Source: Macrostomum lignano
Lineage: Eukaryota
Direction: 5' to 3'
Length of the DNA: 64,000 bases
Assembly (NCBI GenBank): GCA_002269645.1
Contig: NIVC01000942.1
Coordinates: 124,001 to 188,000, forward strand
Shown here: one piece after another, positions 1,354 to 64,000 of the stretch
How the letters are laid out: each line of letters begins with the position of its first letter
Numbering within the stretch: position 1 is the stretch's first letter
Position numbers and translations under genes: made by a program
The notes under the pieces: generated by a model
Seen by the model: the letters and a program-made list of their open reading frames with translations, nothing else
The model's database searches: none
Told to the model about the DNA's origin: nothing

Positions 1354-12197
<10,844 letters not shown>

Positions 12198-22465: not shown

Positions 22466-30829
<8,364 letters not shown>

Positions 30830-38065: not shown

Positions 38066-44097
<6,032 letters not shown>

Positions 44098-45187
44098 CAG
44101 CAATCGAACAAGTCAGTCTGGAATCGCAATCAAGTTTCCGATTGATTAATCATGTTTAAATGCCAATTAGGTCAAGCATACGACTGGTAAAATAACAGCA
44201 CGAGCGTATGCACACTTGCTCTCGAGAATTTAATAAGCAGACTAACAGACAGGGTTAAAGTTCAGCCCCAGCTTCTGTTCAATTCTGGGGCCTTGACAGC
44301 TAAAATTAGGTCATGCAATCAGTTTATTAAAGATAGAAGAACTTTACACAAAATGCCATAAAATTTCTTTGTAATTTTTTTATAATCACAGGCTGATGCA
44401 CAGAAACATGAATTCCAGAAGACGACTTGGTCAAAAAGCATAATTATTCATGTTATCAAATTGTCTGTATAGAGCAACTAGCAACTAGATATTTAACTAG
44501 TTTTACTGACGTATTTTGCCCCTGTAGAATAGAAAGCCAACATTGCTTTGAGTGCAGATTGGTGATCTAGTGACATTTCATCACATTTTTTAAATTAAAG
44601 GGATTTTTCGAATTCTTAAGATTAAAATATTACTATTCGTAAATTACTTCACAGATGCAAGTGCAGCTTTACTGTCAAGCATTGTTTTGCTTTCTAAGGC
44701 GCTATCAGAACTAAAAAATCCTGATATATAAAGATGCATAAATAATTTTAAAAAGTATGACAGTGAATTTTCACAAAAAGGCTAGCCGCCTAACTCCTTA
44801 TAGACCTCGAAACCCGTGCTCCTCCAGGCCCTAACAAAATCTCTTGTTTTTGTCACAACGGCAATGTTTTTCTTTTTCAAGTTTCTTAATTGTAAGCTGT
44901 TGAAAATAATTCCTACATAACAGCAAAAAGTTAGAAGAGACGAGACGATCCTAGTGACCTAGTCATGTAAAATATTTTGGTAAAAAATATTCAAAAATAC
45001 GTGGAATCCATTATTCCATTGTTTTTATTGAAAAAAGCGAAACAACCGAAAACATAGACTACTTGGAGAAATTTTGCTTTAAGCGAACTAAATTTATCTC
45101 TTCTTAAAACTTATTATTTGAACGTTTTAAATGACTGCAAGCATAGGATTACCTTAGTACTTATCTTGAGCGAAGCAACTAATTTAC

Positions 45188-45225
<38 letters not shown>

Positions 45226-45519
45226 AGTTGGCTCAGGCAAGAAGCCTGTTTGGCCAATATATTTCTATGTATTTAAGATTGCTTCAGGAATAGGAGACAA
45301 TATTTTAGCACTAGTTATTTAATTATGATTAGTACGAGTTTTGCAAAATGGTATTTGAAAGAACGCGGAAAAGTTATTAACGATACTTGGACGACTAACG
45401 AAGCGAAAGAAAAAGCAAGGAGTTAAAAAAAGTATTGCAGTTAATAAAAGTAAAAACGAAAGAAAAATGAACAAAAACGAAGCAAAAATTTGAACTAATT
45501 CGAATATAGGGAGCGATGG

Positions 45520-45533
45520 ATTGCCATGGCAAA
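45520..45533. promoter_or_regulatory. Candidate RFX X-box in the divergent CFAP91/GTF2H5 promoter region
   Basis: ATTGCCATGGCAAA matches 12 of 14 positions of the palindromic GTTGCCATGGCAAC; CFAP91 is a ciliary gene. Confidence 0.4.
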
Positions 45534-45971
45534 TTACAAAACGCTAAATATTGAAAAGAAAACAATTTTAAAAAACATTTAAAATTAAATCTCTTTATCT
45601 TTTAAGATACAAATAGTTTTGTCAAGAATTACTGTAGCTGTTTTGTTTTTTCTAGCTATAAATTTTTAAATATGCGTCTTCGTCGAAAGTTATAAATATA
45701 GCTCTAAAAACCGTTCGTCGTTGGTCCAGTCGGTTGGAGGATTAGCTGCTTGAATAAAAATTAAGTAGCCTATTCATTATTAGTACTAGAATCAATGTGT
45801 TTATCGAAGTTGCAGTATTCAGGTATACAGTAAATATAATTAATAGTGTCGCTTTTATTTCCACCGAAAACAACTAATTCATAAAAGTATCAAAGTTTTT
45901 CCTGTAAATAATATTTTTTGCTTGACATTTGATTTTGTTCCCCTTTTATAAACAATATTATCAGCAAAATA

Positions 45972-48407
45972 ATGGTCAACTATGTTAAAGGAACTCTAGT
46001 AAAATGGTAAGCAAGATAGATTCCTGACAGTAAGCCAAATGTCAATAAATATCAATTAACAATGATTAAAAAATATGCTATTTATAAGCTGTAAATTTTA
46101 ATGTAAATTTGAGCTACACTGGAATGAATTGAGTCACATTATAATATATGGTATATAGTCTTATTAAAATATTGCAAATCTGAAAAAAATATAGTGCTAC
46201 TAGTTATTAGCATTAGTAACTTGAAAATATTATATTTACTAATTGGGAACTTTTTGGCTATCCTGCAGAATGGTTCATTATATTTACTGTACAAATATTT
46301 TTTTTAGCTATTGACATGAAACTTTCCAAAAATAAATATTTTCATTATGCCAACATTTTAGAAGTGTTTTGGCATTAAAATTCCATTTGTGGAGGGTTAC
46401 AATTTAACTTTTATTGTAATTTCTAGGTTTTTCCCAGTTTTTTTTCAAATTTCAACCACTATTATGCAATTTTGAATTTTGTGTGCTGATGTCACTGGCA
46501 AAAAATGTGTCTATGGCCAAAATTAGCTATAAACTCTAGGGATATTATTGAGATAGAAATATATATTGTATTTAATATTTTTATATAAAAATTACCATAG
46601 TTTTTTCCATTTAAAGCATGGAAAGGTATTCTAAGACAATCAAGTTGAAGCTATATCCTTATTTTGTTAATTCTATTTATTTAGCAATTTGTTGAAATGA
46701 TCAATCTTTTCTTGTTTATTGCTAATGCCTTTTATCCAAGTGACTAATAGCTAACCTAAATACCAAGTTGCGGATGGTATGCATATACGCCGGAACTTTT
46801 CTGGCATACAAAATGGCCACAATTGGTGTACACAACCCCTGGCAAACTTTGTTGGCATACACTATTGGCGTACACAAGTAACATAGCCACACATACTTTT
46901 TCGGCGTACAAATTTTGATGAATAAATTCATGCTATGCATGAAAATTGTAATGTAAATTACATTTTTATGTAAAGTAACAGATTCATATCATTATTGATA
47001 AAATTTTGCTTCTTTTGAAATTAACAATAAATAAAATTAGTGTGAATTTTTGCTAAGAGTATCAATTTTGCATCATATTTTTGTAGGTATAATTTAAGTT
47101 TGTTTAAATTTAAAATATTTATAATATTTTAAAAACACTTTTCATACAAAAGCCTTTCTTAGAAAACTCTAGTCATGAACACTGAAAACTGTATTACCTT
47201 TTTAGGAATTTTTGGCGTACATTTTAGTGCAACATTTTGTTTTTGGCATACATTGGTATACAAAGTCCTTGACACCTAAATTTGGTCTGGCATACACGGA
47301 TACATGATCCTCACACTGGCCTAAATATGTAAAAAATGAAAGTATCATTTTATATACATAATGATATACAAAAATAATACTATAAAAATGGTGAACAGAT
47401 AAATGTTTGCACTTTTTTATTATTTTTTATTCTACCATTTTTGTAGAAATGAGCTTCTTTAAAGGATCATAAAAATTGTATATGTATCAAGGTTCCTCAA
47501 CCAAAAAGTTACATATTGGAGACATCCAACTTTCTATTTGGATACTAATTTTGCTGCTCAGGTTTAGATTTAGCAAGTATATCTAATTATTGAAGAGTAT
47601 AAATAAAATTAAAGTTATGTTATTATATTGTATTAATTTTCTATATTTATATATAATAGTATTATAAATAAAAATGTTAATTATTGACCACATAGGTTAA
47701 AAAATGCAAAAATACAATAAAATGGCAACATTTCTACCCTTGAATTTACTTTGTTAAGTCTCTCTTACCCATATAAATCATCAACTATAGACTTCATATT
47801 TATAGAGTGCTCAAAAATAACAATTTATATAGAAGTCCTAAAGTTGCAAGAATCCAAATAATTATCTATTTTTTATACTTTATATGAAATATAAAATAAA
47901 ATAAAATATGGAAATTAAGTAAATGGCATTTAGCTTAGAAAAAACTAAGTGCACAAAATCAGAATGTCAGAAATAGCTTAAATACCATTGTTATAATACA
48001 AAAATCATAGCATGTTTTGTTGACTAAGATTAGGCCTGTCATTTAAGAACTTGTTTGTCCAATTGTTATTATATAATAAAATTATTGTCTTATAGATGAA
48101 AAAATTGATCCTAATTAGACAGTCAGTACTTTTTTAAATTTATGCTATGTAGCAAGTAAAAGTATGGTAATTTCCTATACCAAATTTGACCAGTCACTGT
48201 CAAATTTCTCACTGTTTTAGTGACCCAGCAATGAAGCAACTCCTGTTGCACTTGTCTGAGTCTCACGCGCTTGGCAAAGCCTTTGTTGTTGCCGACCTGG
48301 ATGAGGAGCACCTGTTTGTTGAGACGGCTATGGTTGATAAGATCAAAGAGAAGCTGGCGTCCGAGATGGACCGGATTTCTTACACTCCATCGAGTGTTTA
48401 TGAATGA
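45972..48407 (+). CDS. GTF2H5: TFIIH subunit 5 (TFB5/TTDA), 2 exons, 73 aa
   Basis: Exon 45972-46006 (MVNYVKGTLVK-C) and exon 48221-48407 (DPAMKQLLLHLSESHALGKAFVVADLDEEHLFV). The phase-2 intron falls in the Cys codon of the conserved CDPAMKQ motif. Confidence 0.93.
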
Positions 48408-48739
48408 ATGACTTTGTTATTGATGAAAAAACTGTTGTAAAGTGATTTCATTCTGTACTCATATTTGCTTCTAATGTTGCATTTGCATTTCGGTGTGTGT
48501 AAAAAATGATTTAGAGATCAAATAACCCTTTGCCATTGGACTCTGCTTATTTCTTATACACCTAGATATATGCCTAGAAAGAATAATAGCAGGGACAGAG
48601 GCGCCTAGTCTGTATAGGGGGCTCCGGACACACCTGATGCAGAGGCATTGCCACATGTTATGGCAGGAGAGGGAGGCTGAAAAGTTACACAAGTTTTAGC
48701 GCGAACAGCAACCCTTTTAGCTCTTGCTCTGGCCCTCTT

Positions 48740-49445
48740 TTTGACGCCCCTTGGCACTCATTTGAAACCCCTGGCATTCCGTTTTGGCGCCCCCATGGCA
48801 CTCATTTGAAACCCCTGGCATTCCGTTTTGGCGCCCCTTTGGCACTCATTTTGGCGCCCCCTTGGCACTCCGTTTTGGCGCCCCTTTGGCACTCATTTTG
48901 GCGCCCCCTTGGCACTCCGTTTTTGCGCCTCCTTGGAACTCATTTTGGCGCCCCATCGGCACTCATTTGGCGCCCCATCGGCACTCATTTTGGCGCCCCT
49001 TGGCACTCATTTTGGCGCCCCTTTGGCACTTATTTGGCGCCCTATCGGCACTCATTTGGCGCCCCATCGGCACTCATTTTGGCGCTCCCTTGGCACTCAT
49101 TTGGCGCCCTATCGGCACTCATTTGGCGCCCCTTGGCACTCATTTTGGCGCCCCCTTGGCACTCATTTGGCGCCCCATCGGCACTCATTTGGCGCCCCTT
49201 GGCACTCATTTGGCGCCCCCTTGGCACTCATTTGGCGCCCCCTTGGCACTCATTTGGCGCCCCTGGCACTCATTTGGCGCCCCTTTGGCACTCATTTGGC
49301 GCCCCTTGGCACTCATTTGGCGCCCCTTGGCACTCATTTGGCGCCCCTTTGGCACTCATTTGGCGCCCCCTTGGCACTCATTTGGCGCCCCTGGCACTCA
49401 TTTGGCGCCCCTTTGGCACTCATTTGGCGCCCCTTGGCCTTCTTG
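48740..49445. repeat. Minisatellite of about 21 bp between GTF2H5 and NTAN1
   Basis: Unit TTGGCACTCATTTGGCGCCCC. Confidence 0.95.
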
Positions 49446-49615
49446 GCGTCTCCGAGAGAAAGACGGTCAATTTTTTCTGTGTTACAATGCTTGATAAACT
49501 TCATAAACACGTGGCGCAAAAATGAAAAATAAAAATAGAATCCCAAATATTGCAATAACAGAATCCCTAATCTTTCAAAAACATCTTCAAAATCTTCAGC
49601 AGCAGCAGCAGCTAA

Positions 49616-51791
49616 ATGGTTGTCTACCTGGACTCGAACAGCCGTCCACTGTCCAGCACGGATCTGTCCAGTCCTAAGTCGGCCCTGTCCACCGTCCTGT
49701 CCTGTCCGGCGCTTGCCCAATCGGCGCTCCGCTTGGTGTCGACGCCGCCGATTCAGGCTGGGCCGGCCGGCCTGCTCTACCTGCACCAGCGCGAGTGCGC
49801 CTTCGTCCGCCGGACAGATCCGGCCGTCCAGCTGCTGGCCTCGGACGATGCCACCACCTGTCATTTGGTTGCCGTGCGAAATCCGGCCACGGGCGACACC
49901 CTGCTGTGCCACTTTGATGGCGCCGGCGCCAGCAGTCTTGTCTTCATTGTCGATGAGCGCTTCTGCGGCTCCGGCAGCAGCGGCTCGGTCGAACTGGACC
50001 TGCACCTGGTCGGCGGCTTCCCCGACTCCCGTGGCGAGTCCGCTTCGCTCACCCAAGAACTGCTGCAGGCTTTTCGTCGCTCCCGGCTTCGCTTCCGGTT
50101 GCGCACCGCCTGCTTGGCGCCGAGTAATGGCGCCAGGCGCGGCGCGGACAACCTCGTGTATCCGGTGATCACTGGGCTGGTGATGTCCGTTGCCGATGGC
50201 TCGCTGACGCCCGCCAAGGTGCCGCTGCCTGTCCGAGGGCCCTGGCAGGCGTTGCGCGGACTGCGGTTTCTGAGCCGCGAGGAAGTCGTGTTTGAGGTCT
50301 GTCGGCAGAGTGGAACTCTGGTTGGGGCTTGGCGTCGTCTGTTTGTTAGAGTTTGTCGTGAGAGCAGCTATTCTGAAATCCTTGAATAGTTGCTACTTGA
50401 ATGTGAGGATATCCATTTTCAGTTCGTTTAAAAAATCGTCTCAGAATTCCTCTGAAATTCACCTCGGAATTCTTCTGAAATTCACCTCGGAATTCTTCTG
50501 AAATTCACCTCGGAATTCTTCTGAAATTCACCTCGGAATTCTTCTGAAATTCACCTCGGAATTCTTCTGAAATTCACCTCGGAATTCTTCTGAAATTCAC
50601 CTCGGAATTCTTCTGAAATTCACCTCGGAATTCTTCTGAAATTCACCTCGGAATTCTTCTGAAATTCACCTCGGAATTCTTCTGAAATTCACCTCGGAAT
50701 TCTTCTGAAATTCACCTCGGAATTCTTTTGAAATTCACCTCGGAATTCTTCTGAAATTCGCCTCAGAATTCTTCTGAAATTCGCCTCGGAATTCTTCTGA
50801 AATTCGCCTCAGAATTCTTCTGAAATTCGCCTCAGAATTCTTCTGAAATTCGCCTCGGAATTCTTCTGAAATTCGCCTCAGAATTCTTCTGAAATTCACC
50901 TCGGGATTCTTCTGAAATTCGCCTCGGAATTCTTCTGAAATTCGCCTCAGAATTCATCTGAAATTCACCTCAGAATTCTTTAGAAATTCACCTCGAAATT
51001 CTTCTGAAATTCACCTCGGAATTCTTCTGAAATTCACCTCAGAATTCTTTAGAAATTCACCTCGGAATTCTTCTGAAATTCACCTCGGAATTCTTCTGAA
51101 ATTCACCTCGGAATTCTTCTGAAATTCGCCTCAATTCATCTGAGATTCGCCTCAGAATTCATCTGAGATTCGCCTCAGAATTCATCTGAAATTTGCCTCA
51201 GAATTCATCTGAGATTCGCCTCAGAATTCATCTGAGATTTGCCTCAGAATTCATCTGAGATTTGCCTCAGAATTCATCTGAAATTTGCCTCAGAATTCAT
51301 CTGAAATTTGCCTCAGAATTCATCTGAAATTTGCCTCAGAATTCATCTGAGATTTGCCTCAGAATTCATCTGAAATTTGCCTCAGAATTCATCTGAGATT
51401 CGCCTCAGAATTCATCTGAAATTCGCTTCTAACTTTTAACTGCCAGTGAATGTGCTGAGAAGCCCAATTGCTAACTTATTGCACAATGCCTCAGGTGTAC
51501 GATCCAGACAGTCACTGCCTGGTGCTGCGACCCTTTGACTACAGCGGCAGCCAGATATTCGACGCTTATGCGGACGCGCCTGATTCGGCCTTGGCTAAAT
51601 TGTCAACTTCGCCGCGTCAAGAGCCGCCACACTTTGTTGCCAACCTGCGCCAGGCGCTGCGATTCGGCCGAGCTAACAAGCGGCCGGCTCGGCAGGTGTT
51701 TCATCTGGGAGACATTGTTGAACGGCCGCTGCCTGGCGGCCTGTGGCAGCACGGAGCTGGGGCTGCGGAGTCCGACTTGAAGACTGCATGA
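49616..51791 (+). CDS. NTAN1: Protein N-terminal asparagine amidohydrolase, 2 exons, 325 aa
   Basis: Exons 49616-50296 and 51495-51791 (phase 0). Motifs: LLYLHQRE, ASDDATTCH, CHFDG, LHLVGGF, RGP, LSTSPRQEPPHFV. Confidence 0.93.
50445..51425. repeat. 23-bp minisatellite filling the NTAN1 intron
   Basis: Unit GAATTCTTCTGAAATTCACCTCG. Confidence 0.96.
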
Positions 51792-51809
51792 TCCAGGACT
51801 GCCGACCGT

Positions 51810-52870
51810 CTGTGCTGAGGGTCCTGAGGGGGAGTAGCGGCAGTGTGCTGAGGGTCCTGAGGGGAGGGGGGGGTAGCGGCAGTGTGCTGAGGGTCCTGAG
51901 GGGAGGGGGGGTAGCGGCAGTGTTCTGAGGTTCCTGAGGGGAGGGGGGTAGCGGCAGTGTGCTGAGGGTCCTGAGGGGGGGTAGCGGCAGTGTGCTGAGG
52001 GAGTAGCGGAAGTGTGCTGAGGGTCCTGAGGGGAGGGGGGGTAGCGGCAGTGTGCTGAGGGTCCTGATGGGGAGTAGCGACAGTGTGCTGAGGGTCCTGA
52101 GGGGGGGAGTAGCAGCTGTGTGCTGAGGGTCCTGATGGGGAGTAGCGGCAGTGTGCTGAGGGTCCTGAGGAGGGGTAGCGGCAGTTTGCCGAGGGTCCTG
52201 AGGAGGGGTAGCGGCAGTTTGCCGAGGGTCCTGAGGGTGAGTAGCGGCAGTGTGCTGAGGGTCCTGAGGAGGGGTAGCGGCAGTTTGCGGGTTGCCGAGG
52301 GTCCTGAGGAGGAGTAGCGGCAGTGTGCTGAGGGTCCTGAGGGTGAGTAGCGGCAGTTTGCCGAGGGTCCTGAGGAGGGGTAGCGGCAGTTTGCCGAGGG
52401 TCCTGAGGGTGAGTAGCGGCAGTGTGCTGAGGGTCCTGAGGAGGGGTAGCGGCAGTTTGCGGGTTGCCGAGGGTCCTGAGGAGGAGTAGCGGCAGTGTGC
52501 TGAGGGTCCTGAGGGTGAGTAGCGGCAGTGTGCTGAGGGTCCTGAGGAGGGAGTAGCGGCAGTGTGCTGAGGGTCCTTGGGGAGTAGCGGCAGTGTGCTG
52601 AGGGTCCTGAGGGGGTAGCGGCAGTGTGCTGAGGGTCCTGAGGGAGTAGCGGCAGTGTGCTGAGGGTCCTGAGGGAGTAGCGGCAGTGTGCTGAGGGTCC
52701 TGAGGGAGTAGCGGCAGTGTGCTGAGGAAGTAGCGGCAGTGTGCTGAGGGTCCTGAGGGAGTAGCGGCAGTGTGCTGAGGGTCCTGAGAGGGGGGTAGCG
52801 GCAGTGTGCTGAGGGTCCTGAGGGGGGAGTAGCGGCAGTGTGCTGAGGGTCCTGAGGGGGGAGCTGCAGT
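51810..52870. repeat. G-rich minisatellite of about 30 bp just after the NTAN1 stop
   Basis: Unit GAGTAGCGGCAGTGTGCTGAGGGTCCTGAGG. Confidence 0.95.
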
Positions 52871-53209
52871 GTGTTTTTATTTATACTATACAAGTAAATT
52901 TATTTATTTACTTTATATCTTGCTTCGCTAAGCTGATTACTCTTTGTAAGAACAACAGGCGACAATTTCGTTTGCGTTTTGCGCGTAATTTTAGCAGCTT
53001 GGGTGTTTTTGCTTAGCCTTGAAGAAGTTTGTTATTCCTGTAAGCGGCACTTCTACGGTATTGTCTTTCATTTTCAGTAATAATAGATTCTCTATATATT
53101 AATAAAACTTTTGATAAGTTACTTGATTTTGCATTTACTTTTTTTCTGTTTTGATTGTTGTCACACTTCGCATACACTCGATAGCTGACTTGTTCTTGTT
53201 ACCATTTAG

Positions 53210-53770
53210 TGATGCAGTCACACCCAGCCTCCAGAGATGCAGTCACACCTAGCCTCCAGAGATACAGTCAGACCCAGCCTCCAGTGATGCAGTCACCCCA
53301 GCCTCCAGAGATGCAGTCACACTCAGCCTCCAGTGATGCAGTCATCCCAGCCTCCAGAGATGCAGTCACACCCAGCCTCCAGAGATGCAGTCACACCTAG
53401 CCTCCAGAGATGCAGTCACCCCCAGCCTCCAGAGATGCAGTCACCCCCAGCCTCCAGAGATGCAGTCACCCCAGCCTCCAGAGATGCAGTCACCCCCAGC
53501 CTCCAGTGGTGCAGTCACCCCAGCCTCCAGAGATGCAGTCACACTCAGCCTCCAGTGATGCAGTCACCCCAGCCTCCAGAGATGCAGTCACATCTAGTCT
53601 CCAGTGATGCAGCCACCCCAGCCTCCAGTGATGCAGTCACCCCAGCCTCCAGTGATGCAGTCACCCCAGCCTCCAGTGATGCAGCCACCCCCAGCCTCCA
53701 GTGATGCAGTCACCCCCAGCCTCCAGTGATGCAGTCACCCCCAGCCTCCAGTGATGCAGTCACCCCAGCC
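53210..53770. repeat. 23-24-bp minisatellite just before the THOC7 ATG
   Basis: Unit CAGCCTCCAGWGATGCAGTCACC(C). Confidence 0.95.
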
Positions 53771-53784
53771 TGCAACGATGCACC

Positions 53785-55913
53785 ATGCCACTGCTGGCTG
53801 TCACAGAGGAAGAGGTGATCAAGCGCCGGCTATTGGTGGAAGGCGACTCCGGCCGCGAGGACAAGAAGCTGCAGTACGCTACGCGGCAGCTGGCAGCCTG
53901 GCTGGAGGCCGCCCCCGCCCCGGCCAAAGACGGCCAGACCCTGCAGCAGCTGCTGGTTCACGTGGCCCAACTGGAGGCTGCGATGGGCCGCGCAGCCAGA
54001 GCAGAGGAAGTGAACAGGACCGAGCAGCAGCACTATCGGGCTCTGGGCGACCAGGTTGCCGAGGAGATTCAGGCTGCGGAAGCACGGATTGTGCAGTTGC
54101 AGGTGAGCTTGGGTCTCGTCGGAGAGATCTTTATTCGTGTCTTTCCTTTATTTTTACCACTCTCGGAAGACTGCCCTTAAACACCCCCAGTTGACCCTGT
54201 CCTTAAACACCCTCAATAGACCCTGTCCTTAAACACCCTCAATAGACCCTGTCCTTAAACACCATCCACAGACCCTGTCCTTAAACACCATCCATAGACC
54301 CTGTCCTTAAACACCATCCATAGACCCTGTCCTTAAACACCATCCACAGACCCTGTCCTTAAGCACCATCCACAGACCCTGTCCTTAAACACCATCCACA
54401 GACCCTGTCCTTAAACACCATCCACAGACCCTGTCCTTAAACACCATCCATAGACCCTGTCCTTAAGCACCATCCATAGACCCTGTCCTTAAACACCATC
54501 CATAGACCCTGTCCTTAAACACCATCCATAGACCCTGTCCTTAAACACCATCCACAGACCCTGTCCTTAAACACCATCCATAGACCCTGTCTTTAAACAC
54601 CCTCAATAGACCCTGTCTTTAAACACCCTTAATAGACCCTGTCTTTAAACACCCTCAATAGACCCTGTCCTTAAACACCCTCAATAGACCCTGTCCTTAA
54701 ACACCATCCACAGACCCTGTCCTTAAACACCATCCACAGACCCTGTCCTTAAACACCATCCACAGACCCTGTCCTTAAACACCATCCACAGACCCTGTCC
54801 TTAAACACCATCCATAGACCCTGTCCTTAAACACCATCCATAGACCCTGTCCTTAAACACCATCCATAGACCCTGTCCTTAAACACCATCCACAGACCCT
54901 GTCCTTAAACACCATCCACAGACCCTGTCCTTACACACCATCCATAGACCCTGTCCTTAAACACCATCCATAGACCCTGTCCTTAAACACCATCCACAGA
55001 CCCTGTCCTTAAACACCATCCACAGACCCTGTCCTTAAACACCATCCACAGACCCTGTCCTTAAACACCATCCATAGACCCTGTCCTTAAACACCATCCA
55101 TAGACCCTGTCCTTAAACACCATCAATAGACCCTGTCCTTAAACACCATCCATAGACCCTGTCCTTAAACACCATCCATAGACCCTGTCCTTAAACACCA
55201 TCCATAGACCCTGTCCTTAAACACCATCCACAGACCCTGTCCTTAAACACCATCCACAGACCCTGTCCTTAAACACCATCCACAGACCCTGTCCTTAAAC
55301 ACCATCCACAGACCCTGTCCTTAAACACCATCCACAGACCCTGTCCTTAAACACCATCCATAGACCCTGTCCTTAAACACCATCCATAGACCCTGTCCTT
55401 AAACACCATCCATAGACCCTGTCCTCAATCTCACTGAGTAGTAATTAGCTGCCGAGGCTCCACACATTTGAATCTGTGAACAGCTACTCACGCCGTTTAC
55501 CTCGCACTAAAATTCTTAACTCTCAGTCGGAGCTCGAGACGGCCATGCAGTGCCGCCGCAACCGTCAGGAATACGACACCCAGGCCGGCGTGATTCTCGG
55601 CCACCCCGACCGCGCCTCAAGTGAAGCTCGCCTAGCCGAAATGGGCGCCAGACTAGCCAGTTTGCGCCAGACTGACCGGCGCCTCGGCGCCAGGCTGGAA
55701 GCGCGCCGGCGCCAGTGCCGCCTGTTGGCAGCTGCTCTGCGCGATTTCTCGTCAGCCGCCGCGTTTGAAGAAGACGAAGGCGGCGAATCCGGCGACGCGA
55801 CCGATTTGGAAGTCGAGCCGCCGGACGCGTCAGTCGAACCCGAGGAGGCTGCAGCGAATGATGAAGATAAAGATGTTGTAATGCTGAATAAGCCTTCGGC
55901 GTCTAGCAGCTAG
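53785..55913 (+). CDS. THOC7: THO complex subunit 7, 2 exons, 234 aa
   Basis: Exons 53785-54102 and 55527-55913 (phase 0). Motifs: AVTEEEVIKRRLLVEGD, RRNRQEYD, ILGHPDR, RLEARRRQ; AATAAA at 56105. Confidence 0.93.
54190..55425. repeat. 26-bp minisatellite filling the THOC7 intron
   Basis: Unit GACCCTGTCCTTAAACACCATCCAYA. Confidence 0.97.
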
Positions 55914-56564
55914 CTGTCTTTGGTTTTGAGGCAAACAGCGAAACTTGCAAGACTGAGAAATCATGTCCCTCTCAACTACTTACTTATCCTAGTAGTATAA
56001 ATGCCCATGTTTTCTCTTCTAACCACAATTATTATGACTTACTAGTTTAAACTAATTGCATTTTGGCGTGTTTCATTAACACGTGGCTTGTTATCAATGT
56101 TATCAATAAACATTTGAACAATAATAATATCCTGCTCTGTTGCCATCTTGAGGGTCTCTGTTTTGCTAATTTGCAATAGTTAAGTGTCATCATACATATA
56201 TGATTGTCCAGATGGGGACTCTGTAGCTCTGTAGCATCAGAGGAGACGGGAATTATTGATATTCATAAAGCTTTTTGTTTAGAAAATTAGGATTTTGTGT
56301 TAATTTTTTTATTCTATGTACTGTACAATTGCATATGTCTTGCCTAAAAACACCATTAAAATGGCACAGCTCAGCTCATCGGTTTTATGAATCTAGTTTT
56401 AAACGAAAAGCTTTTTTGAATATCAATAGAGCTATAAGAACGACACAACGTATTAAAATATGAGCATTGGGTCTGCCTCCTATCCAAAGCAATAACATTT
56501 TTTGTGCTGAAAATTTCCATCTCCGTAGTGTATTTTTCGGCGAAAACCAGCCTCAAACATTCCC

Positions 56565-57440
56565 TGTCCTTCTGCTTGAGTAGTCCTTGTTCAAAAGATT
56601 AAAATTAGGTCTTCCTTCTGCTTGAGTAGTCCTTGTTCAAAAGATTAACATTGGGTCTTCCTTCTGCTTGAGTAGTCCTTGATCAAAAGATTAACATTAA
56701 GTCTGCCTTCCTTCTTAGGTCTTCCTTCTGCTTGAGTAGTCCTTGGTCAAAAGATTAACATTAAGTCTGCCTTCCTTCTTAGGTCTTCCTTCTGCTTGAG
56801 TAGTCCTTGGTCAAAAGATTAACATTAAGTCTGCCTTCCTTCTTAGGTCTTCCTTCTGCTTGAGTAGTCCTTGGTCAAAAGATTAACATTAGGTCTTCCT
56901 TCTGCTTGAGTAGTCCTTGGTCAAAAGATTAACATTAGGTCTTCCTTCTGCTTGAGTAGTCCTTGATCAAAAGATTAACATTAGGTCTGCCTTCCTTCTG
57001 CTTGAGTAGTCCTTGGTCAAAAGATTAATATTGGGTCTTCCTTCTGCTTGAGTAGTCCTTGATCAAAAGATTAACATTGGGTCTTCCTTCTGCTTGAGTA
57101 GTCCTTGATCAAAAGATTAACATTGGGTCTTCCTTCTGCTTGAGTAGTCCTTGATCAAAAGATTAACATTAGGTCTTCCTTCTGCTTGAGTAGTCCTTGA
57201 TCGAAAGATTAACATCAGGTCTGCCTTCTTTCTTAGGTTTTCCTTCTGCTTGAGTAGTCCTTGATCGAAAGATTAACATCAGGTCTGCCTTCTTTCTTAG
57301 GTTTTCCTTCTGCTTGAGTAGTCCTTGATCGAAAGATTAACATTAGGTCTGCCTTCTGCTTGAGTAGTCCTTGGTCAAAAGATTAACATCAGGTCTGCCT
57401 TCCTTCTTAGGTCTTCCTTCTGCTTGAGTAGTCCTTGGTC
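56565..57440. repeat. Minisatellite of about 46 bp between THOC7 and ASK
   Basis: Unit TTCTGCTTGAGTAGTCCTTGATCAAAAGATTAACATTGGGTCTTCC. Confidence 0.95.
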
Positions 57441-57577
57441 CGCGTGCGTGCGGCCTGGCCTCGATTTACGTCAGCGCCGCCGCCCCCTTACAAAAAATTA
57501 TCCAGAAATGTCCCACTACTCTACTGCAAGTAGGCTAGAAACGATTTTGACAAGCTAAACTTATTGCAAAATTGCAG

Positions 57578-60500
57578 GCCGCAAGCTTGCACAGCCAGCA
57601 GGCTGCCTCGAGCGGTGGCGCTGCTGCAGCCGCCGCCTCAGCTGCCGGTTCAACATCTGGCGGCTGCGGCTCCGCGTCGCGACTCCGCGTTGTTTGTGTT
57701 GTCGACCAGACCGCGCCTCTGGGAACCGCCGCCCCGGCGTCGCCGTCATTGACGTCAACGGCTCCCCGTCAGAAGGCGTTCGCCGATGTTGAGCGAGCCT
57801 GCAAGCGGTGAGACAACTGAAAAAATTGTCTTGGACTATAGGCTTAGTGTGTGCGAGTCTTGACAGAGGAGGGCGAACTCTAGCCCACAAAGCCTCTCTG
57901 TCCGGCTCTCGGGTTCTTTGAAACTCCACAATAGCTACTCGGCCCGCTCAGGGTCTTTTCTCAGCTCTCCCCTCCTCTCCTCTCCTCTCCTCTCTTTCTC
58001 CTCTTTTCTCCTAGCATTTATCTCTCATCTATTCTCCATTCTCGCCTCTCCTCTCCTTTCTTTTTCATCTCTCTCCTCTATTTCTTCTCCCTTCCTCTCT
58101 AATCTGGCCCGCAGACGCGAGCTAAATTATTTATCTGCCTCTGAGGATAAAAAGTTCGCCTACCCCTGTGATCTAAAAGAATTCTTAGAGGTGTAAGGTT
58201 CATTTTGTTTAAACTTTTGATTCGACAGCTGCTGACAGCTAAATTCTGCAGTCATGGATAAAAAAGCACTGCTAAAATAAACGATGGAACCGCATAATTT
58301 AATAGTTCTATGCTTATTTTATGCTATACTTTGTCAATGGTAATAATTATCGCAGCCATTTCAATTAGAGCCTATTTTAATTTGCCCAGCTGGTCAAATT
58401 TCAAGCCAAATTTGTCGAATTGAAAGTTTTAAAATTTGAATTGTGCATTTTAAACTGTATAGAATAATATTTAGCACTAAGAAAGCATTTCTATTTATGA
58501 AATAAACAAGGCATAGACAATAATAGCTGGTGAAATCTGTTAAAAATGTAGCTCGATTTTTAATTCTGTAATAAAAGGCCTGTTTCGCTTTTAAAACGCT
58601 TTTTTGTCTGAAAATTGTTTGTAGCAAAAATAAAAACCTTAGCACCAATTTAGTGTCCTAGACAAGATTTTAGCACCAATTTAGTGTCCTAGACAAGAGT
58701 TTGGCACCAATTTAGTGTCCTAGACAAGAGTTTGGCACCAATTTAGTGTCCTAGACAAGAGTTTAGCACCAATTTAGTGTCCTAGACAAGAGTTTGGCTC
58801 CAATTAAGTGTCCTAGACAAGATTTTAGCACCAATTTAGTGTCCTAGACAAGAGTTTGGCACCAATTTAGTGTCCTAGACAAGAGTTTAGCTCCAATTTA
58901 GTGTCCTAGACAAGAGTTTAGCACCAATTTAGTGTCCTAGACAAGAGTTTAGCTCCAATTTAGTGTCCTAGACAAGAGTTTGGCACCAATTTAGTGTCCT
59001 AGACAAGAGTTTAGCACCAATTTAGTGTCCTAGACAAGAGTTTGGCACCAATTTAGTGTCCTAGACAAGAGTTTAGCACCAATTTAGTGTCCTAGACAAG
59101 AGTTTAGCACCAATTTAGTGTCCTAGACAAGAGTTTAGCTCCAATGTAGCATCCTAGAGGTATCCTACTTTAGAGTTTTGCGGCGCAAGCAGGCCTACTA
59201 ATGAATTCCCAGAAATTTCAACTTTTACTCCTACAAGATAAGGTTTCAGGCCAGCGCTTTGAGGTCTGATATTATAGTTAGTTAACATTTGGCTGCAATG
59301 AACTATAAATAAAAAAAAATACACTTTAAAGCCAAGGATTGCACTGGACTCATGACACTACTGTTGTACAGTCGTATTCAGTAGTCACAGCTGGTTTTAG
59401 TGTTCTAAATTATAGACATCTGTTGTTGTTTTTTTCAATCGCCATTTACGCATTGTTTTGTTTGTTTTCGCTTGTCCAACGCAAATTTGAGTCCTAATAT
59501 GAGTAAATGCTAGTTGAACAGCTGGGTTGTTTATCGTTGGTTTTGTCAGTACATGCCGATTACCTAATAATTGTCGTTTATTTAACTACGGCTTAGCAAA
59601 TTTGCTCAGTCCTAACATCCGATTGTACTAAGCGCAATCATATGGCTTATAGTTGTTACATTGCGCATCTAACCGTTGCACAGGAGCAAAATATATGCAA
59701 ATTATTAATCATAATCCGCTTTGTTTCCAGTGTTGGCTTAACCTGCATCAGCTTTGGCCACATCATCAACGATGTGGACACTGCAGCTGAGCTGTTCTAC
59801 AGTGCTCATGCCGTTATCGTCATGCTCACCGACTTGGTAATGCAGCTTAGGGATAGGCTTTGGTGTCTGCTGTGGTGTGCGACCCTGCGCTCATGGGAAC
59901 TTGGGAGCTTTGACCTTCATTTGTCCTTGCGGGACCTCTGCTAGCGTGTTAGTCTACATGTCGATGATGAGATTCTAATTGGGTCTAGATGATGAGATTC
60001 TAATTGGGTCTAGATCATGAGATTCTAATTGGGTCTAGATCATGAGATTCTAATTGGGTCTAGATGATGAGATTCTAATTGGGTCTAGATCATGAGATTC
60101 TAATTGGGTCTAGATGATGAGATTCTAATTGGGTCTAGATGATGAGATTCTTATTGGGTCTAGATGATGAGATTCTTATTGGGTCTAGATGATGATATTC
60201 TAATTGGGTCTAGATGATGATATTCTAATTGGGTCTAGATGATGAGATTCTAATTGGGTCTAGATGATGATACTCTAATTGGGTCTAGATGATGAGATTC
60301 TAATTGGGTCTAGATGATGAGATTCTAATTGGGTCTAGATGATGAGATTCTAATTGGGTCTAGATGATGAGATTCTAATTGGGTCTAGATGATGAGATTC
60401 TAATTGGGTCTAGATGATGAGATTCTAATTGGGTCTAGATGATGAGATTCTAATTGGGTCTAGATGATGATATTCTAATTGGGTCTAGATGATGAGATTC

Positions 60501-63500
60501 TAATTGGGTCTAGATGATGAGATTCTAATTGGGTCTAGATGATGAGATTCTAATTGGGTCTAGATGATGAGATTCTAATTGGGTCTAGATAATGAGCAAG
60601 GCTGATCGCACTGCTGCATGTCTTGAAGTCTAATACAAAATGTGTTTATTATTAAAGTTTCTTGTGAGAATAGAGGCTTATGTGTTTGTTTCCAGCTTTT
60701 TTGTTGTTTTAATTTTTTGTTGAAGGCGCAGCGCAAATGATAAATAGAATTTTTTGTTATTGCGTTTCAACCGTTATGGCCAGACGAGTACTTTTAGTTT
60801 TTTACGGGTTTGTGTAAAATAAATATTAAGTATTAGTCCAGTTAAAGTACTCGCTTGTCTCACACTAACTCTTCCAAGTCTTGGCAGTTTGTGTCAGTTT
60901 TATTCCTACTAATCTGGTTAGCTATTACTCGCTATGATCTGCGAGGGAGCTGGCGTTTTTGATAGCTTTTTGAAATCCTAACTCACTTCTAATCCACTCT
61001 AACCCACATCTAATAGTCCCTAATCCACTGCTAGAATGGTCCCTAATCCACTGCTAGAATAGTCCATAATCCACTGCAGAATCGTCCTTAATCCACCTCT
61101 AATAGTCCCTAATCCCCCTCTAATAGTCCCTAATCCACTGCTTGAATGGTCCCTAATCCACTGCTAAAATGGTCCCTAATCCACTGCTAGAATGGTCCCT
61201 AATCCACTGCTAGAATGGTCCCTAATCCACTGCTAGAATGGTCCCTAATCCACTGCTAGAATGGTCCCTAATCCACTGCTAGAATGGTCCCTAATCCACT
61301 GCTAGAATGGTCCCTAATCCACTGCTAGAATACGCTCGTAGTTACATATCTACACACATTAGAACAATATGAGGTGGTTAGTGCGGCTCTGGTGCCTGCA
61401 GTTATTTTATTTGTTTGTTGTGAATCAATGATTTTCTGTTTGGTGTTGTTAATCCCTCAGCAGCAGTTTTATGAGGCTGGTACAAGTGCTGTACTAGTGC
61501 AATCCTGGCGTCAGTAAATTATAAATATTAATTATGCAATCCATATTTTTGCACAGCTCTATTTATCAGAATTTCAATACGATATCGCTCAAAATTGACA
61601 CTTCATTAGCAGCCAAATTTTGCGGAAACTCGGAATCATAAAAAATTATTAATTGATATTTTATTTGCACGGCTAATTCCATTGGTATCTGTTGCTACTG
61701 ACTAGTTCTCAAGCTTGCAACTTGCTCTATGCCTTGGCTTTTACCAATTGCTACTTATCAGTAGTGAGGCCTAGATTATCTCTGCTAGCAATTTAATTGG
61801 AATTTTGATTTTTTATTTATTGCACTAAATTTGCTAACAACAATACAGGTTAGATGTTGAGCTGCATAAGGTCCAGTTCACCCACCTGGACTATGGCACC
61901 ACTACCGCTCTGCACGAGTTTTACAATTCAGAGGTGGCCATAACGGAAATGTCCACCAAGGTTTGTCTTACTGGCGACAGCTGTGAGCAGTCCGCGCGCT
62001 GCCCCCCCTTTTTTATCTGCTCTTGAGACAACCTGTGAACTGGTTCGTTCGTCTTTTGCTTTCTGGGCCAACTGGCGCACGCGGATGGCCCGTTGAAAAC
62101 GCTACCCGTGACAAGGATCGTTTTTAAAGAGTCATTGCAAACAACTCACTGGTGACTCAAGCGAGTTGTAGAACCGTTAAAAAAGTCAAACGAAAAAAAT
62201 CCTCCAAGAGTCGTTGTGTTGGCGCTTAACTTTCTACTAACTCAAGTAGACTATATAGAGTCGTGATAAATGTGAAATTGTACCGCGAAGTCTTGTCGTT
62301 TTTGAGTCGTCTAGAGTCTGGGGCGACGCAAGTGACTCTTGGGACGTTTCTTGGCCTTTGGTACCGTTTTCATCGGGCACAACAGGATAAGGTTGAGGCC
62401 TCGGCTTGCTGTCTCTATGCTTTGTGCTGTGTGTGTGGTGTGTGTTTTTTGTGTTGCGGAAGCAGCAGGGCCTGGAGATGAAGATGAACGAGAGGGATTG
62501 CCGCTATATAACAGCGAGTGTAGCGCCATGCAAATTCATGCAAATCTCAGACCGAGGACTTGCCTTACCAACCCCCACCCCATCGCCATCGCCATTCTCC
62601 ACTTCCTCCTTCGCTCCGTTCCTGAGCAATGCGAGGCTGTGTGTGCGCCTACCAGCCCAGATGATGAGGGGTTTGGCGTCTGACACTCTCAGTTGGCTTA
62701 GCAGCGATAATATAGACAGCGGGCCTATAGCGCATTCTTATCCCTGCCGAGTTATGGGAGTCTGGGCCGCATCGCCCGTCCTAATGGGCGAAATTGGCTG
62801 CATCGTTGCTTTTTCCCATTTCTCTCTCTCTCTTGCTTCCCCCTGTCCTGCTCAAAGCTCCCCCCCCCCAAGGCCAATATTAGTTTTAGTAAATATATGC
62901 TGTTACTTACACAGCCTGCCTACGAATACTTCTATTCAATGGCAACTATACACTGACAGTTCTGACTGATGCACTTGTCATTCGCTAATTTTTTTCATTC
63001 TAAATTATCTGATAATTTTTTTACTTTTAGAAGAAATCCGCTGCTTTTGTCCTGTTTTTCTTGTCATCTTTTTTTAGGCCTCAGTTAAACCTGTTGCTGC
63101 TTGAGCTGGCTTTATTTGTTTTTCCTGTTTAATTGTTCCTAATTTTTATCAACGCGTCCGCAGGTCCAGCAGTACTCAATCCTGTATCACCTGGGCGTTA
63201 GGGAGAGTCTGGGCATGCGGGACAACATTATTCTGGTGCACGACCTGAATAAGGATGAGACCGACTCGCTGCGGGTGAGTGCGGCTTTTGGCCTGAGGAT
63301 TTGGGAGGCTGGCCCAGCAACTGAGGATCTGGGAGGCTGGCCCAGCAACTGGGGATCTGGGAGGCTGGCCCAGCAACTGAGGATCTGGGAAGCTGGCCCA
63401 GCAACTGAGGATCTGGGAGGCTGGCCCAGAAACTGAGGATCTGGGAGACTGGCCCAGCAACTTAGGATCTGGGAGGCTGGCCCAGCAACTGAGGATCTGA

Positions 63501-64000
63501 GAGGCTGGCCCAGCAACTGAGGATCTGGGAGGCTGGCCCAGCAACTGAGGGTCTGGGAGGCTGGCCCAGCAACTGAGGGTCTGGGAGGCTGGCCCAGCAA
63601 CTGAGGGTCTGGGAGGCTGGCCCAGCAACTGAGGGTCTGGGAGGCTGGCCCAGCAACTGAGGGTCTGGGAGGCTGGCCCAGCAACTGAGGGTCTGTGAGC
63701 AGTCTTCTAAAAGCAGCAACCCAGCAGTCAGCCGCAGCCGCAGCCGCTGCCCCTACCCCGCAGAACTCGCTGTCCGCCTCCTACCGGCTGTTCCCCTACC
63801 TGGTGGACGACAGCACGGGCCGATGCGTGGTGCCCGACTCGGCCTGCCACAAGCTGCTGCTGACCAACTGCCACACCGGCCACGACCACGGCACAGACTC
63901 GCTGCTGCTCACCAAGCTCAAGCGAGCACTTCGGGAAGTTGAGTCCACCTCGAAGGCGCAGCTGAAGGAGAAATTTCTAGACGATCTTCAGAAGGCCCGA
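57578..64000 (+). CDS. MAP3K5: ASK1-family MAP kinase kinase kinase (MAP3K5/MAP3K15-like), 5' part; runs off the window
   Basis: Exons 57578-57807 (LRVVCVVD...QKAFADVERACK), alternative exon A 59731-59836 or B 61849-61960, 63164-63274 (ILYHLGVRESLGMRDNIIL) and 63764 to beyond 64000 (YRLFPY...KEKFLDDLQKAR). These are collinear with the ASK1 N-terminal thioredoxin-binding region as I recall it (FYHLGVRESFSMANNIIL; ESILNDIRKAR). The start codon is unresolved, and MAP3K5 vs MAP3K15 cannot be distinguished. Confidence 0.88.
58640..59145. repeat. 31-bp minisatellite, ASK intron
   Basis: Unit AGCACCAATTTAGTGTCCTAGACAAGAGTTT. Confidence 0.95.
59731..59836 (+). CDS. ASK alternative exon A (VGLTCISFGHIINDVDTAAELFYSAHAVIVMLTDL)
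   Basis: Acceptor CGCTTTGTTTCCAG, donor TTG|GTAATG, 106 nt, enters phase 2 and exits phase 0, no stop; aligns with exon B. Confidence 0.75.
59963..60595. repeat. 25-bp minisatellite between ASK exons A and B
   Basis: Unit GATGATGAGATTCTAATTGGGTCTA. Confidence 0.96.
61000..61332. repeat. 23-bp minisatellite between ASK exons A and B
   Basis: Unit CCCTAATCCACTGCTAGAATGGT. Confidence 0.93.
61849..61960 (+). CDS. ASK alternative exon B (LDVELHKVQFTHLDYGTTTALHEFYNSEVAITEMSTK)
   Basis: Branch-like GCTAAC, acceptor TACAG, donor AAG|GTTTGT, 112 nt, phase 2 to phase 0; close to ASK1 LHFGKLDFGETTVLDRFYNADIAVVEMS. Confidence 0.88.
63295..63695 (-). repeat. 28-bp minisatellite of a dispersed family (copy 3, inverted), ASK intron
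   Basis: Unit GCTGGCCCAGCAACTGAGGATCTGGGAG, the reverse complement of the arrays at 9825 and 14380. Confidence 0.93.

What the first reader, a model, noticed from the sequence alone, without database searches (positions are those of the whole stretch)
59731..61960. Homologous, frame-enforced mutually exclusive exons in the ASK1-family N-terminal regulatory domain
Seen: two exons about 2 kb apart (A 59731-59836, B 61849-61960). Each has a good acceptor and donor, each enters in phase 2 and exits in phase 0, and each is open. They align to each other: A VG--LTCISFGHIINDVDTAAELFYSAHAVIVMLTDL; B LDVELHKVQFTHLDYGTTTALHEFYNSEVAITEMSTK. Both match the single ASK1 segment VGATLETLHFGKLDFGETTVLDRFYNADIAVVEMSDA (from memory). 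The upstream exon ends in phase 2 and the downstream exon starts in phase 0, so including both or neither shifts the frame: exactly one must be used. B is the conserved version and A is strongly diverged yet intact. Established: this region lies in the thioredoxin-binding N-terminal domain that gates ASK1 activation. Inference: an exon-duplication switch making two ASK isoforms with different redox or partner regulation. I know of no such switch in ASK genes.
Basis: partly seen in the sequence, partly recalled or inferred. Interest (0 to 1): 0.88.

Follow-up and report, generated by a model that had tools for sequence, protein, structure and literature searches.

The report
Duplicated alternative exon in flatworm ASK kinase
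A stress-kinase (ASK) gene of the flatworm Macrostomum lignano carries two old, diverged copies of one 36-38-codon exon of its regulatory N-terminal domain, laid out so that a full-length protein needs exactly one of them. This is a credible but still transcript-unproven case of mutually exclusive splicing, a well-known kind of gene architecture.

Summary
The window is M. lignano contig NIVC01000942.1 and the gene is an ASK-family MAP3K. Exon A (59731-59836, 106 nt) and exon B (61849-61960, 112 nt) both have AG/GT borders, the same phase and open frames. Including both puts a stop at codon 4 of B; skipping both puts a stop in the next exon.

A is a real homologue of the ASK exon. It scores 13 bits against a profile of 50 other ASK proteins, which none of 20,000 shuffles reached; other intron ORFs score 1.5 bits or less. 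A has coding-type codon periodicity. It is intact in all three gene copies of the assembly, with one synonymous difference. Similarity between A and B is seen only in the protein, so the duplication is old.

A keeps 15 of 17 conserved hydrophobic positions. It replaces the conserved LDFGE loop and two near-invariant acidic residues.

Weak points:
- No transcript shows that A is used.
- Only isoform B is supported by the NCBI model of a sister copy.
- An old UniProt model joins A to a truncated B in frame, through a poor AAG acceptor.

No duplicate was found in the M. lignano ASK paralogue, a liver fluke or an ant. I judge this a probable lineage-specific mutually exclusive exon pair: a new member of a known kind, of moderate interest.

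The parts
57578..57807 (+). First coding exon (e1) of the ASK gene. It has no ATG and begins directly after a CAG acceptor. The start codon is probably supplied by the spliced leader. The exon ends with 2 nt of a codon.
   Evidence: The open frame back to the stop at 57550 has no Met. The M. lignano SL ends ...TTGCATG (PMC8629364), which is in frame with GCC at 57578. The NCBI CDS of sister copy L004 starts at the equivalent base, 13848.
59731..59836 (+). Exon A: the diverged copy of the 38-codon TBD/DRHyd exon. It is 106 nt, enters in phase 2 and exits in phase 0.
   Evidence: 13.2-13.7 bits, 0 of 20,000 shuffles; GC1/2/3 = 0.51/0.34/0.69 against 0.36 in the upstream intron flank; codon LLR +8.3 in frame, -15.5 and -19.4 out of frame; intact in 3 copies with 1 synonymous difference; pLDDT 89-95 when modelled as the sole exon.
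61849..61960 (+). Exon B: the canonical copy, 112 nt, same phases as A.
   Evidence: Pfam DRHyd-ASK 28.6-37.1 bits. Family HMM 51-54 bits. Same length and phases as the single exon of the M. lignano paralogue and of O. felineus. The L004 NCBI model carries an unmarked DRHyd-ASK hit.
61869..61870 (+). Internal AG inside exon B (cataAG|GTCCAG). It would give B' (61871-61960, 90 nt), which is in frame after exon A.
   Evidence: UniProt A0A1I8JIM8 (P0002) uses it. The frame was checked. It has A at -3 and a purine-rich upstream stretch, whereas all 6 mapped introns plus the gene's other acceptors have CAG.
63164..63274 (+). Exon e3 (VQQYSILYHLGVRES...), phase 0 to 0. It holds the Met at which the NCBI CDS of this copy starts.
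   Evidence: CDS start 19419 in L002 corresponds to window 63215.
63764..64000 (+). Exon e4, the end of the TBD and the start of MAP3K_TRAF_bd. It runs off the window.
59963..60596 (.). 25-nt minisatellite in the A-B intron. Similar arrays lie at 58639-59158, 61012-61331 and 63293-63699. These arrays make the intron lengths differ between gene copies.

Best explanation
An old tandem duplication of one exon of a Macrostomum lignano ASK-family MAP3K gene left two coding copies in series. That exon encodes strand-loop-helix-strand of the N-terminal thioredoxin-binding (DRHyd-like) domain, equivalent to human ASK1 residues about 122-159. The copies are spliced alternatively, one or the other.

Both exon lengths are 1 mod 3. 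Double inclusion therefore gives a stop in the 4th codon of B, and double skipping gives a stop in e3. Such mRNAs would be unproductive and probably degraded by NMD, which is an inference. Isoform B is the canonical ASK. Isoform A keeps the hydrophobic core of the fold but swaps the conserved L-D-[FY]-G-[ET] loop and two near-invariant acidic residues (human D150 and E155) for I-N-D-V, H and M. It would be an ASK with an altered N-terminal regulatory or ligand surface.

Shown: the anatomy, the homology, the coding signature, integrity in three gene copies, and use of full exon B in an annotated model. Inferred: that A is used, that use is mutually exclusive, that NMD acts, and any functional difference.
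For: - Identity of the locus: the window matches M. lignano NIVC01000942.1 with 0 mismatches over 8,474 nt. ASK identity comes from PDB 8qgy (E 5e-19) and Pfam.
- Frame arithmetic and stop positions were verified.
- Homology: A against the family HMM scores 13.2-13.7 bits, with 0 of 20,000 shuffles reaching it and other intron ORFs at 1.5 bits or less. A is collinear with B and with human ASK1 apart from a 2-codon deletion.
- Age: codon-position identity between A and B is 0.37/0.49/0.31, and blastn finds no similarity in the exons or their flanks. The duplication is old, yet the ORF, both splice sites and the residue pattern survive.
- Coding signature: GC1/2/3 is almost identical to that of B. 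The frame-specific codon LLR is +8.3, and only 0.7% of intron windows reach it.
- Conservation: A is intact in all three gene copies with one synonymous change, while B has 2 non-synonymous and 1 synonymous change.
- Residue pattern: A keeps 15 of 17 conserved hydrophobic columns but only 2 of 7 conserved polar, acidic or Gly columns.
- Structure: AlphaFold models exon A as strand-helix-strand with pLDDT 89-95 when it replaces B. The model matches ASK1 8qgy and then DNPH1.
- Splice signals: A (CTTTGTTTCCAG|, |GTAATG) looks at least as good as B (AACAATACAG|, |GTTTGT).
- A-skipping mRNA: the L004 NCBI model has an unmarked DRHyd-ASK hit. That hit needs full B joined to e1, so mRNAs that skip A exist.
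- Base rate: in Drosophila only 0.56% of non-mutually-exclusive exons share these features (PMC3228551).
Against: - No transcript, EST or junction evidence for exon A could be reached with the tools. The word-index protein searches found no protein with an A-e3 junction, but they also missed a known identical protein, so this is uninformative.
- The only public model that contains A joins it to B'.
- Constraint among the three copies has low power. One change was seen where 2.3-3.6 were expected from the flanking introns, which is not significant.
- A's codon-usage score is weaker than those of B and e3. A does not reach Pfam DRHyd-ASK even at E 10.
- No docking/selector-type complementarity was found.
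- The AlphaFold results are driven by the family alignment.
- No second species was available to test conservation.
Confidence: 0.58

Rival explanations
1. Exon A no longer contributes to protein. It is either a silent relic of the duplication or a 'poison' exon: when spliced in together with B it creates a stop at codon 4 of B and sends the mRNA to NMD, which would tune ASK levels rather than make a second isoform.
For: - A+B gives an immediate stop.
- Only isoform B is supported by an annotated model.
- A is far more diverged than B from every ASK: 13 against 51-54 bits and no Pfam hit.
- A has lost two near-invariant acidic residues and the LDFGE loop.
- Its codon score is the weakest of the exons.
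- The constraint test among copies is not significant.
Against: - A poison exon or relic needs no open frame, no retained hydrophobic pattern (15 of 17 columns) and no codon periodicity. With synonymous sites saturated, a neutral copy should have lost these.
- The only difference among the three copies is synonymous.
- The length stays 1 mod 3, as needed for productive substitution.
Confidence: 0.27
2. Both exons are constitutive. A is joined to a 5'-truncated B (B', acceptor at 61870), as in UniProt A0A1I8JIM8. The protein would then carry a tandem repeat of 36 + 30 residues in the domain.
For: The combination is in frame and exists as a public gene model from the older ML2 annotation.
Against: - The acceptor is cataAG with a purine-rich upstream stretch. 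All 6 mapped M. lignano acceptors, and those of e1, A, B, e3 and e4, are CAG.
- The same model also invents a frame-rescuing gap inside e4 (HGPMR replaces about 45 conserved-frame residues). This suggests a predictor artefact.
- The L004 NCBI model has a strong DRHyd-ASK hit and is 135 residues longer than the e3-Met model. The expected difference is 131 for e1+B and 159 for A+B'. A+B' gives only a weak 22-bit hit.
- The 7 codons upstream of B' align without gaps to the family and to the paralogue.
- In the AlphaFold model of A+B', exon A drops to pLDDT about 53 while B' takes the canonical place.
Confidence: 0.08
3. Exon A is a chance open reading frame with fortuitous splice-like borders and no relation to ASK.
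For: Similarity to B is low (10 of 36 identical). Unrestricted six-frame scans give unrelated 8-9-bit hits. Pfam does not detect A.
Against: - None of 20,000 shuffles reach A's profile score, and the next intron ORF scores 1.5 bits.
- The alignment is full length and collinear, on the right strand, in the right intron and in the right phase.
- The coding signature is frame-specific.
- A shares the GLTC start with the M. lignano paralogue exon.
Confidence: 0.03

Closest known systems
Mutually exclusive exon pairs that arise by tandem exon duplication, as catalogued by WebScipio/Kassiopeia (PMC3228551, PMC3923563) and for human genes (PMC5740500). From my own knowledge, examples in the same signalling pathway are JNK exons 6a/6b and p38-alpha/MAPK14.
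   Same: There are two adjacent internal exons of near-equal length (106 and 112 nt) with the same phase and canonical splice sites. They share detectable protein homology and encode the same structural element. Joint inclusion or joint skipping shifts the frame.
   Different: Mutual exclusivity is not shown by transcripts here. The copies are unusually diverged (about 28% identity). One copy has lost family-invariant residues. No RNA-structure, steric or U2/U12 mechanism is evident, so only frame and NMD would enforce exclusivity.
Human ASK1/MAP3K5 thioredoxin-binding domain (PDB 8qgy; PMC10972558)
   Same: Isoform B aligns over the whole TBD (E 5e-19). The exon corresponds to human residues about 122-159. 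That span includes 128-143, a segment protected from H/D exchange when TRX1 binds.
   Different: No alternative exon in this region turned up in the literature search. The flatworm gene is SL trans-spliced and has a second, diverged version of the segment.
Poison (NMD-triggering) cassette exons
   Same: Including A together with B introduces a premature stop.
   Different: Poison exons are not expected to keep an open frame, a homologous residue pattern or coding periodicity, and A does.

Membership tests
ASK (MAP3K5/6/15) kinase family | N-terminal TBD / DRHyd-ASK domain | tested here: met
   With exon B, Pfam PF20309 scores 35.7 bits (E 7.8e-9) and the sequence aligns to the ASK1 TBD in 8qgy. 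With exon A, PF20309 is not detected, but the model still matches 8qgy best.
ASK (MAP3K5/6/15) kinase family | MAP3K_TRAF_bd/TPR, ASK_PH and protein kinase domains downstream | tested here: met
   PF13281 scores 70 bits on the window fragment. The annotated products of the three copies carry TPR-S, ASK_PH, Pkinase and HisK-N-like.
Mutually exclusive exon cluster (WebScipio criteria, PMC3228551) | Neighbouring internal exons flanked by further exons | tested here: met
   e1 - A - B - e3 lie on one strand, with no other homologous copy in the introns.
Mutually exclusive exon cluster (WebScipio criteria, PMC3228551) | Similar length (within 20 aa), at least 15 aa, same reading frame, no in-frame stop, conserved splice sites | tested here: met
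   The exons encode 36 and 38 codons. Both enter in phase 2 and exit in phase 0, both have AG/GT borders and both are open.
Mutually exclusive exon cluster (WebScipio criteria, PMC3228551) | Sequence homology between the exons | tested here: met
   Pairwise score 36, shuffle p about 0.003. Against human ASK1, score 40, p about 0.0002. Family HMM 13 bits, with 0 of 20,000 shuffles reaching it.
Mutually exclusive exon cluster (WebScipio criteria, PMC3228551) | Exactly one exon of the cluster present in each mature transcript | not testable with these tools
   No RNA-seq or cDNA access. Indirect evidence only: the L004 model uses B without A, and one old model has A+B'.
Mutually exclusive exon cluster with RNA docking/selector pairing (Dscam-type) | Conserved complementary intronic elements linking a docking site to each variant exon | tested here: not met
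   Only three weak inverted pairs of 18-21 nt (76-83% complementary) were found. All lie inside the e1-A intron.

The most novel reading that the evidence does not exclude
Exon choice acts as a splice-level switch of ASK gating. Isoform A folds like the canonical TBD but lacks the LDFGE loop, which lies in the segment that TRX1 protects in human ASK1, and lacks the two conserved acidic residues of the DRHyd-like pocket. It would therefore be insensitive to thioredoxin, or to a still unknown small-molecule ligand. The flatworm would then have a constitutively primed or differently gated ASK in particular cells or stresses.
Probability: 0.15. Interest if true: 0.6.

Novelty: new member of a known kind. 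Interest (0 to 1): 0.42.

Why it matters
If exon A is used, this would be, as far as the literature search shows, the first ASK gene whose N-terminal regulatory domain is diversified by mutually exclusive splicing. It would also be a natural experiment. The swap keeps the fold's core and replaces exactly the conserved polar loop and the acidic residues whose role in ASK regulation is not settled (thioredoxin contact, or a nucleotide-like ligand as the DRHyd homology suggests). Comparing the two isoforms could show what those residues do.

There is also a practical point. All three kinds of public model for this gene mishandle the region: A is fused to a truncated B, the N-terminus is dropped, or only B is present. 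This is typical of how duplicated alternative exons are mis-annotated.

The reach is limited. The feature is lineage-specific, and the mechanism is textbook.

Tried and rejected
- Two word-index protein searches with isoform B and isoform A junction peptides found no transcript-derived protein. They even missed the identical UniProt entry, so they say nothing about expression.
- Exact-sequence look-ups of P0001, P0002 and P0090 found no contig.
- The Dicrocoelium and Sinanodonta ASK loci were too long to fetch.
- The constraint test among the three M. lignano copies had too little divergence (2-5%) and a mosaic pattern of identity, so it was not significant.
- A splice-site PWM could not be built, because only 6 introns were mapped exactly. 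I used only the -3 base and pyrimidine content.
- The inverted-repeat search for selector/docking pairing found nothing convincing.
- An 8-bit minus-strand hit in L003 (18471-18539) looked like an inverted partial copy of exon B. On reading the DNA it does not resemble exon B, and I took it as chance.
- A literature search for mutually exclusive exons in ASK1 or in M. lignano found nothing relevant.
Full report
**Origin and gene**

Window 55527-64000 is identical, with 0 mismatches in 8,474 nt, to Macrostomum lignano assembly Mlig_3_7 contig NIVC01000942.1 (locus L002). I reached that locus through the upstream neighbour THOC7.

The gene at the finding is an ASK-family MAP3K. The spliced N-terminus aligns to human ASK1 in PDB 8qgy (E 5.4e-19). 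It hits Pfam MAP3K_TRAF_bd and, with exon B, DRHyd-ASK. The annotated products of the three assembly copies add TPR-S, ASK_PH, kinase and HisK-N-like domains.

The first coding exon (57578-57807) has no ATG and starts right after a CAG acceptor. The M. lignano spliced leader ends in ...TTGCATG (PMC8629364), which would supply an in-frame start. The NCBI CDS of sister copy L004 begins at exactly the equivalent base.

**The observation**

Exon A is 106 nt and exon B is 112 nt, so both are 1 mod 3.

| Exon combination | Result |
|---|---|
| e1+A+e3 | open |
| e1+B+e3 | open |
| e1+A+B+e3 | stop at the fourth codon of B |
| e1+e3 (both skipped) | stop inside e3 |
| e1+A+B'+e3 | open (see qualification) |

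One qualification applies. An internal AG in B (cataAG|GTCCAG, 61869-61870) gives a 90-nt B' that is in frame after A. The frame therefore does not strictly enforce 'exactly one'.

**Is A homologous to the ASK exon?**

- Between e1 and e3 there are only 62 stop-free, phase-compatible AG..GT candidates. Apart from B and its sub-variants, A is the top scorer against both B and human ASK1.
- Pairwise local scores are 36 against B (shuffle p about 0.003) and 40 against human ASK1 (p about 0.0002).
- I collected 150 ASK relatives and aligned the exon-equivalent segment of 51 of them. I then built an HMM without the M. lignano sequences.
- A scores 13.2-13.7 bits and B scores 51-54 bits. None of 20,000 shuffles of A reaches A's score, and the best of 68 other intron ORF fragments on either strand scores 1.5 bits.
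- Caveat: in unrestricted six-frame scans of the window and five other loci, short unrelated matches reach 7-9 bits, while A gives 9-11 bits in that setting. Pfam's own DRHyd-ASK model does not report A even at E 10. The case for homology therefore rests on a full-length collinear match in the right intron, strand and phase.
- A also shares its opening 'GLTC' with the single corresponding exon of the second M. lignano ASK paralogue.

**Is A coding?**

- GC at codon positions 1/2/3 is 0.51/0.34/0.69 in A and 0.51/0.30/0.68 in B. The upstream intron flanks are at 0.34-0.36.
- I trained a codon-usage log-likelihood on 3.5 kb of M. lignano CDS against the gene's own introns. A scores +8.3 bits in frame, and -15.5 and -19.4 out of frame. 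Only 0.7% of intron windows reach +8.3. B scores 18.8 and e3 scores 31.9, so A is coding-like but the weakest exon.
- Nucleotide identity between A and B is 0.37/0.49/0.31 by codon position. blastn finds nothing in the exons or their flanks.
- The duplication is therefore old, with third positions near the identity expected by chance. A copy that had been neutral for that long should not still have an open frame, both splice sites, periodic composition and a recognisable residue pattern.

**Conservation**

The assembly holds three copies of the locus (L002 = window, L003, L004).

| Feature | Exon A | Exon B |
|---|---|---|
| Intact in all three copies | yes | yes |
| Synonymous differences | 1 (CAT/CAC) | 1 |
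| Non-synonymous differences | 0 | 2 (E>D, T>A) |

The flanking unique intron differs by 2-5%, in a mosaic pattern. That predicts only 2.3-3.6 changes in 106 nt, so the observed single change is not significant. No other Macrostomum genome could be reached.

The M. lignano paralogue (L001), Opisthorchis felineus (L006) and the ant Pseudomyrmex gracilis (L005) each have a single copy of the segment. The paralogue and O. felineus keep the same exon borders as exon B. In the ant the open fragment holding the segment begins 10 profile positions later. The duplication therefore looks specific to this gene or lineage.

**What differs between A and B**

Of 24 family columns conserved by residue class, 17 are hydrophobic and 7 are polar, acidic or Gly.

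- A keeps 15 of the 17 hydrophobic columns. B also keeps 15.
- A keeps only 2 of the 7 polar, acidic or Gly columns. B keeps 5.
- A's losses cluster in two places: the L-D-F-G-E loop, which becomes I-I-N-D-V, and two acidic residues that are 92% and 88% Asp in the family, which become H and M. In human numbering these are D150 and E155.

Human numbering here is mine, checked against the cysteines C225 and C250 named in PMC10972558. In human ASK1 residues 128-143 (ETLHFGKLDFGETTVL) are among the segments protected from H/D exchange when TRX1 binds (PMC10972558), and they lie inside the exon-equivalent.

AlphaFold2 with a 22-sequence family alignment gave these results:

- Isoform A: pLDDT 86 overall and 89-95 across exon A, which forms strand 46-51, helices 52-56 and 60-68, and strand 71-76.
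- That model's best PDB matches are ASK1 8qgy and then DNPH1, a DRHyd-fold enzyme.
- A+B' protein: B' takes the canonical place at pLDDT 89-94, and exon A falls to about 53.

These models lean on the alignment. They show compatibility, not proof.

**Evidence on usage**

This is the weak point. No transcript data were reachable.

- The NCBI model of L004 (1,457 aa) starts at e1 and carries an unmarked DRHyd-ASK hit (E at most 1e-5). Full B joined to e1 gives E 7.8e-9, A gives no hit, and A+B' gives only E 1.4e-4.
- The L004 model is 135 residues longer than the L003 model, which starts at the Met in e3. The expected difference is 131 for e1+B and 159 for A+B'. L004 therefore represents isoform B with A skipped.
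- The models of L002 and L003 start at the Met inside e3 and say nothing about the region.
- UniProt A0A1I8JIM8, from the older ML2 annotation, joins e1+A+B'+e3. That model also replaces about 45 residues of e4 with a frame-shifted 'HGPMR', so it looks like a frame-rescuing prediction.
- Its internal acceptor is AAG in a purine-rich context. The 6 introns I could map exactly, and the acceptors of e1, A, B, e3 and e4, are all CAG.
- A's own signals are, by eye, at least as strong as B's: a pyrimidine tract CTTTGTTTCCAG and donor GTAATG, against AACAATACAG and GTTTGT. It is therefore hard to see how the spliceosome would ignore A altogether.
- No intronic complementarity of the docking/selector type was found.

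**Verdict**

| Reading | Probability |
|---|---|
| Functional mutually exclusive exon pair from an old tandem exon duplication, with frame incompatibility (and presumably NMD) removing double-inclusion and double-skipping products | about 0.58 |
| A is now a relic or an NMD-triggering exon | about 0.27 |
| A+B' are both constitutive | about 0.08 |
| Chance ORF | about 0.03 |

Mutually exclusive exons born by exon duplication are common and well catalogued. In Drosophila, exons with these features are almost never anything else (0.56%, PMC3228551). The mechanism is therefore known.

What is new is the gene and the particular residues exchanged. I rate the finding a new member of a known kind, with moderate interest that would rise if isoform A proves to be expressed and differently regulated.

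Noticed in passing
window 57550-57580 (and L004 13848): The ASK coding region has no genomic start codon. e1 begins right after a CAG acceptor, and the ATG at the end of the M. lignano spliced leader would be in frame. The start codon therefore appears to be supplied by trans-splicing. THOC7 ends only 1.66 kb upstream on the same strand.
   Followed up: partly
window 1-64000, e.g. 4290-6016, 28729-30360, 54171-55425, 58639-59158, 59963-60596, 61012-61331, 63293-63699: Many introns and intergenic stretches, including each of the three introns e1-A, A-B and e3-e4, hold a long tandem array: 13-65-nt minisatellites plus 4- and 6-nt repeats. Array length differs between the three gene copies; the A-B intron is 2,012, 2,133 and 4,435 nt.
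   Followed up: partly
window 14378-14901 and 63293-63699: The 28-nt repeat unit of these two arrays is the same sequence in opposite orientation, 49 kb apart. This suggests a dispersed minisatellite family.
   Followed up: no
L002 19419 (= window 63215); L003 20148: The NCBI coding models of two of the three ASK copies, including the window's own, start at a Met inside e3. They therefore lack the whole TBD/DRHyd N-terminus. Only the L004 copy is annotated from e1.
   Followed up: partly
UniProt A0A1I8JIM8 (P0002), compared with window 59731-64000: This older gene model fuses exon A to a truncated exon B. It also replaces about 45 residues of e4 with a frame-shifted 'HGPMR'. This is an example of a duplicated alternative exon being forced into one reading frame by a gene predictor.
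   Followed up: yes
L002, L003 and L004 from e1 to e3 (window 57578-63274): Identity between the copies is mosaic. Intron blocks that are 100% identical (for example I1a, I2b and I2c between L002 and L003) sit next to blocks that are 2-9% diverged. This fits gene conversion between copies or partial assembly collapse in this hidden polyploid.
   Followed up: no
window 43797-55913: Upstream neighbours, taken from the annotation of the identical contig: CFAP91 (minus strand), Tfb5, an N-terminal asparagine amidohydrolase and THOC7. The order is conserved in all three copies (CFAP91 was not seen within the fetched stretch of L004).
   Followed up: no
P0027 (ENA metagenome contig, 83 aa): An ASK-like fragment from an unidentified eukaryote has 'FYTAHICIVDFS'. 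It shares the unusual His after FY[ST]A with exon A ('FYSAHAVIVMLT') but keeps the acidic residue.
   Followed up: no
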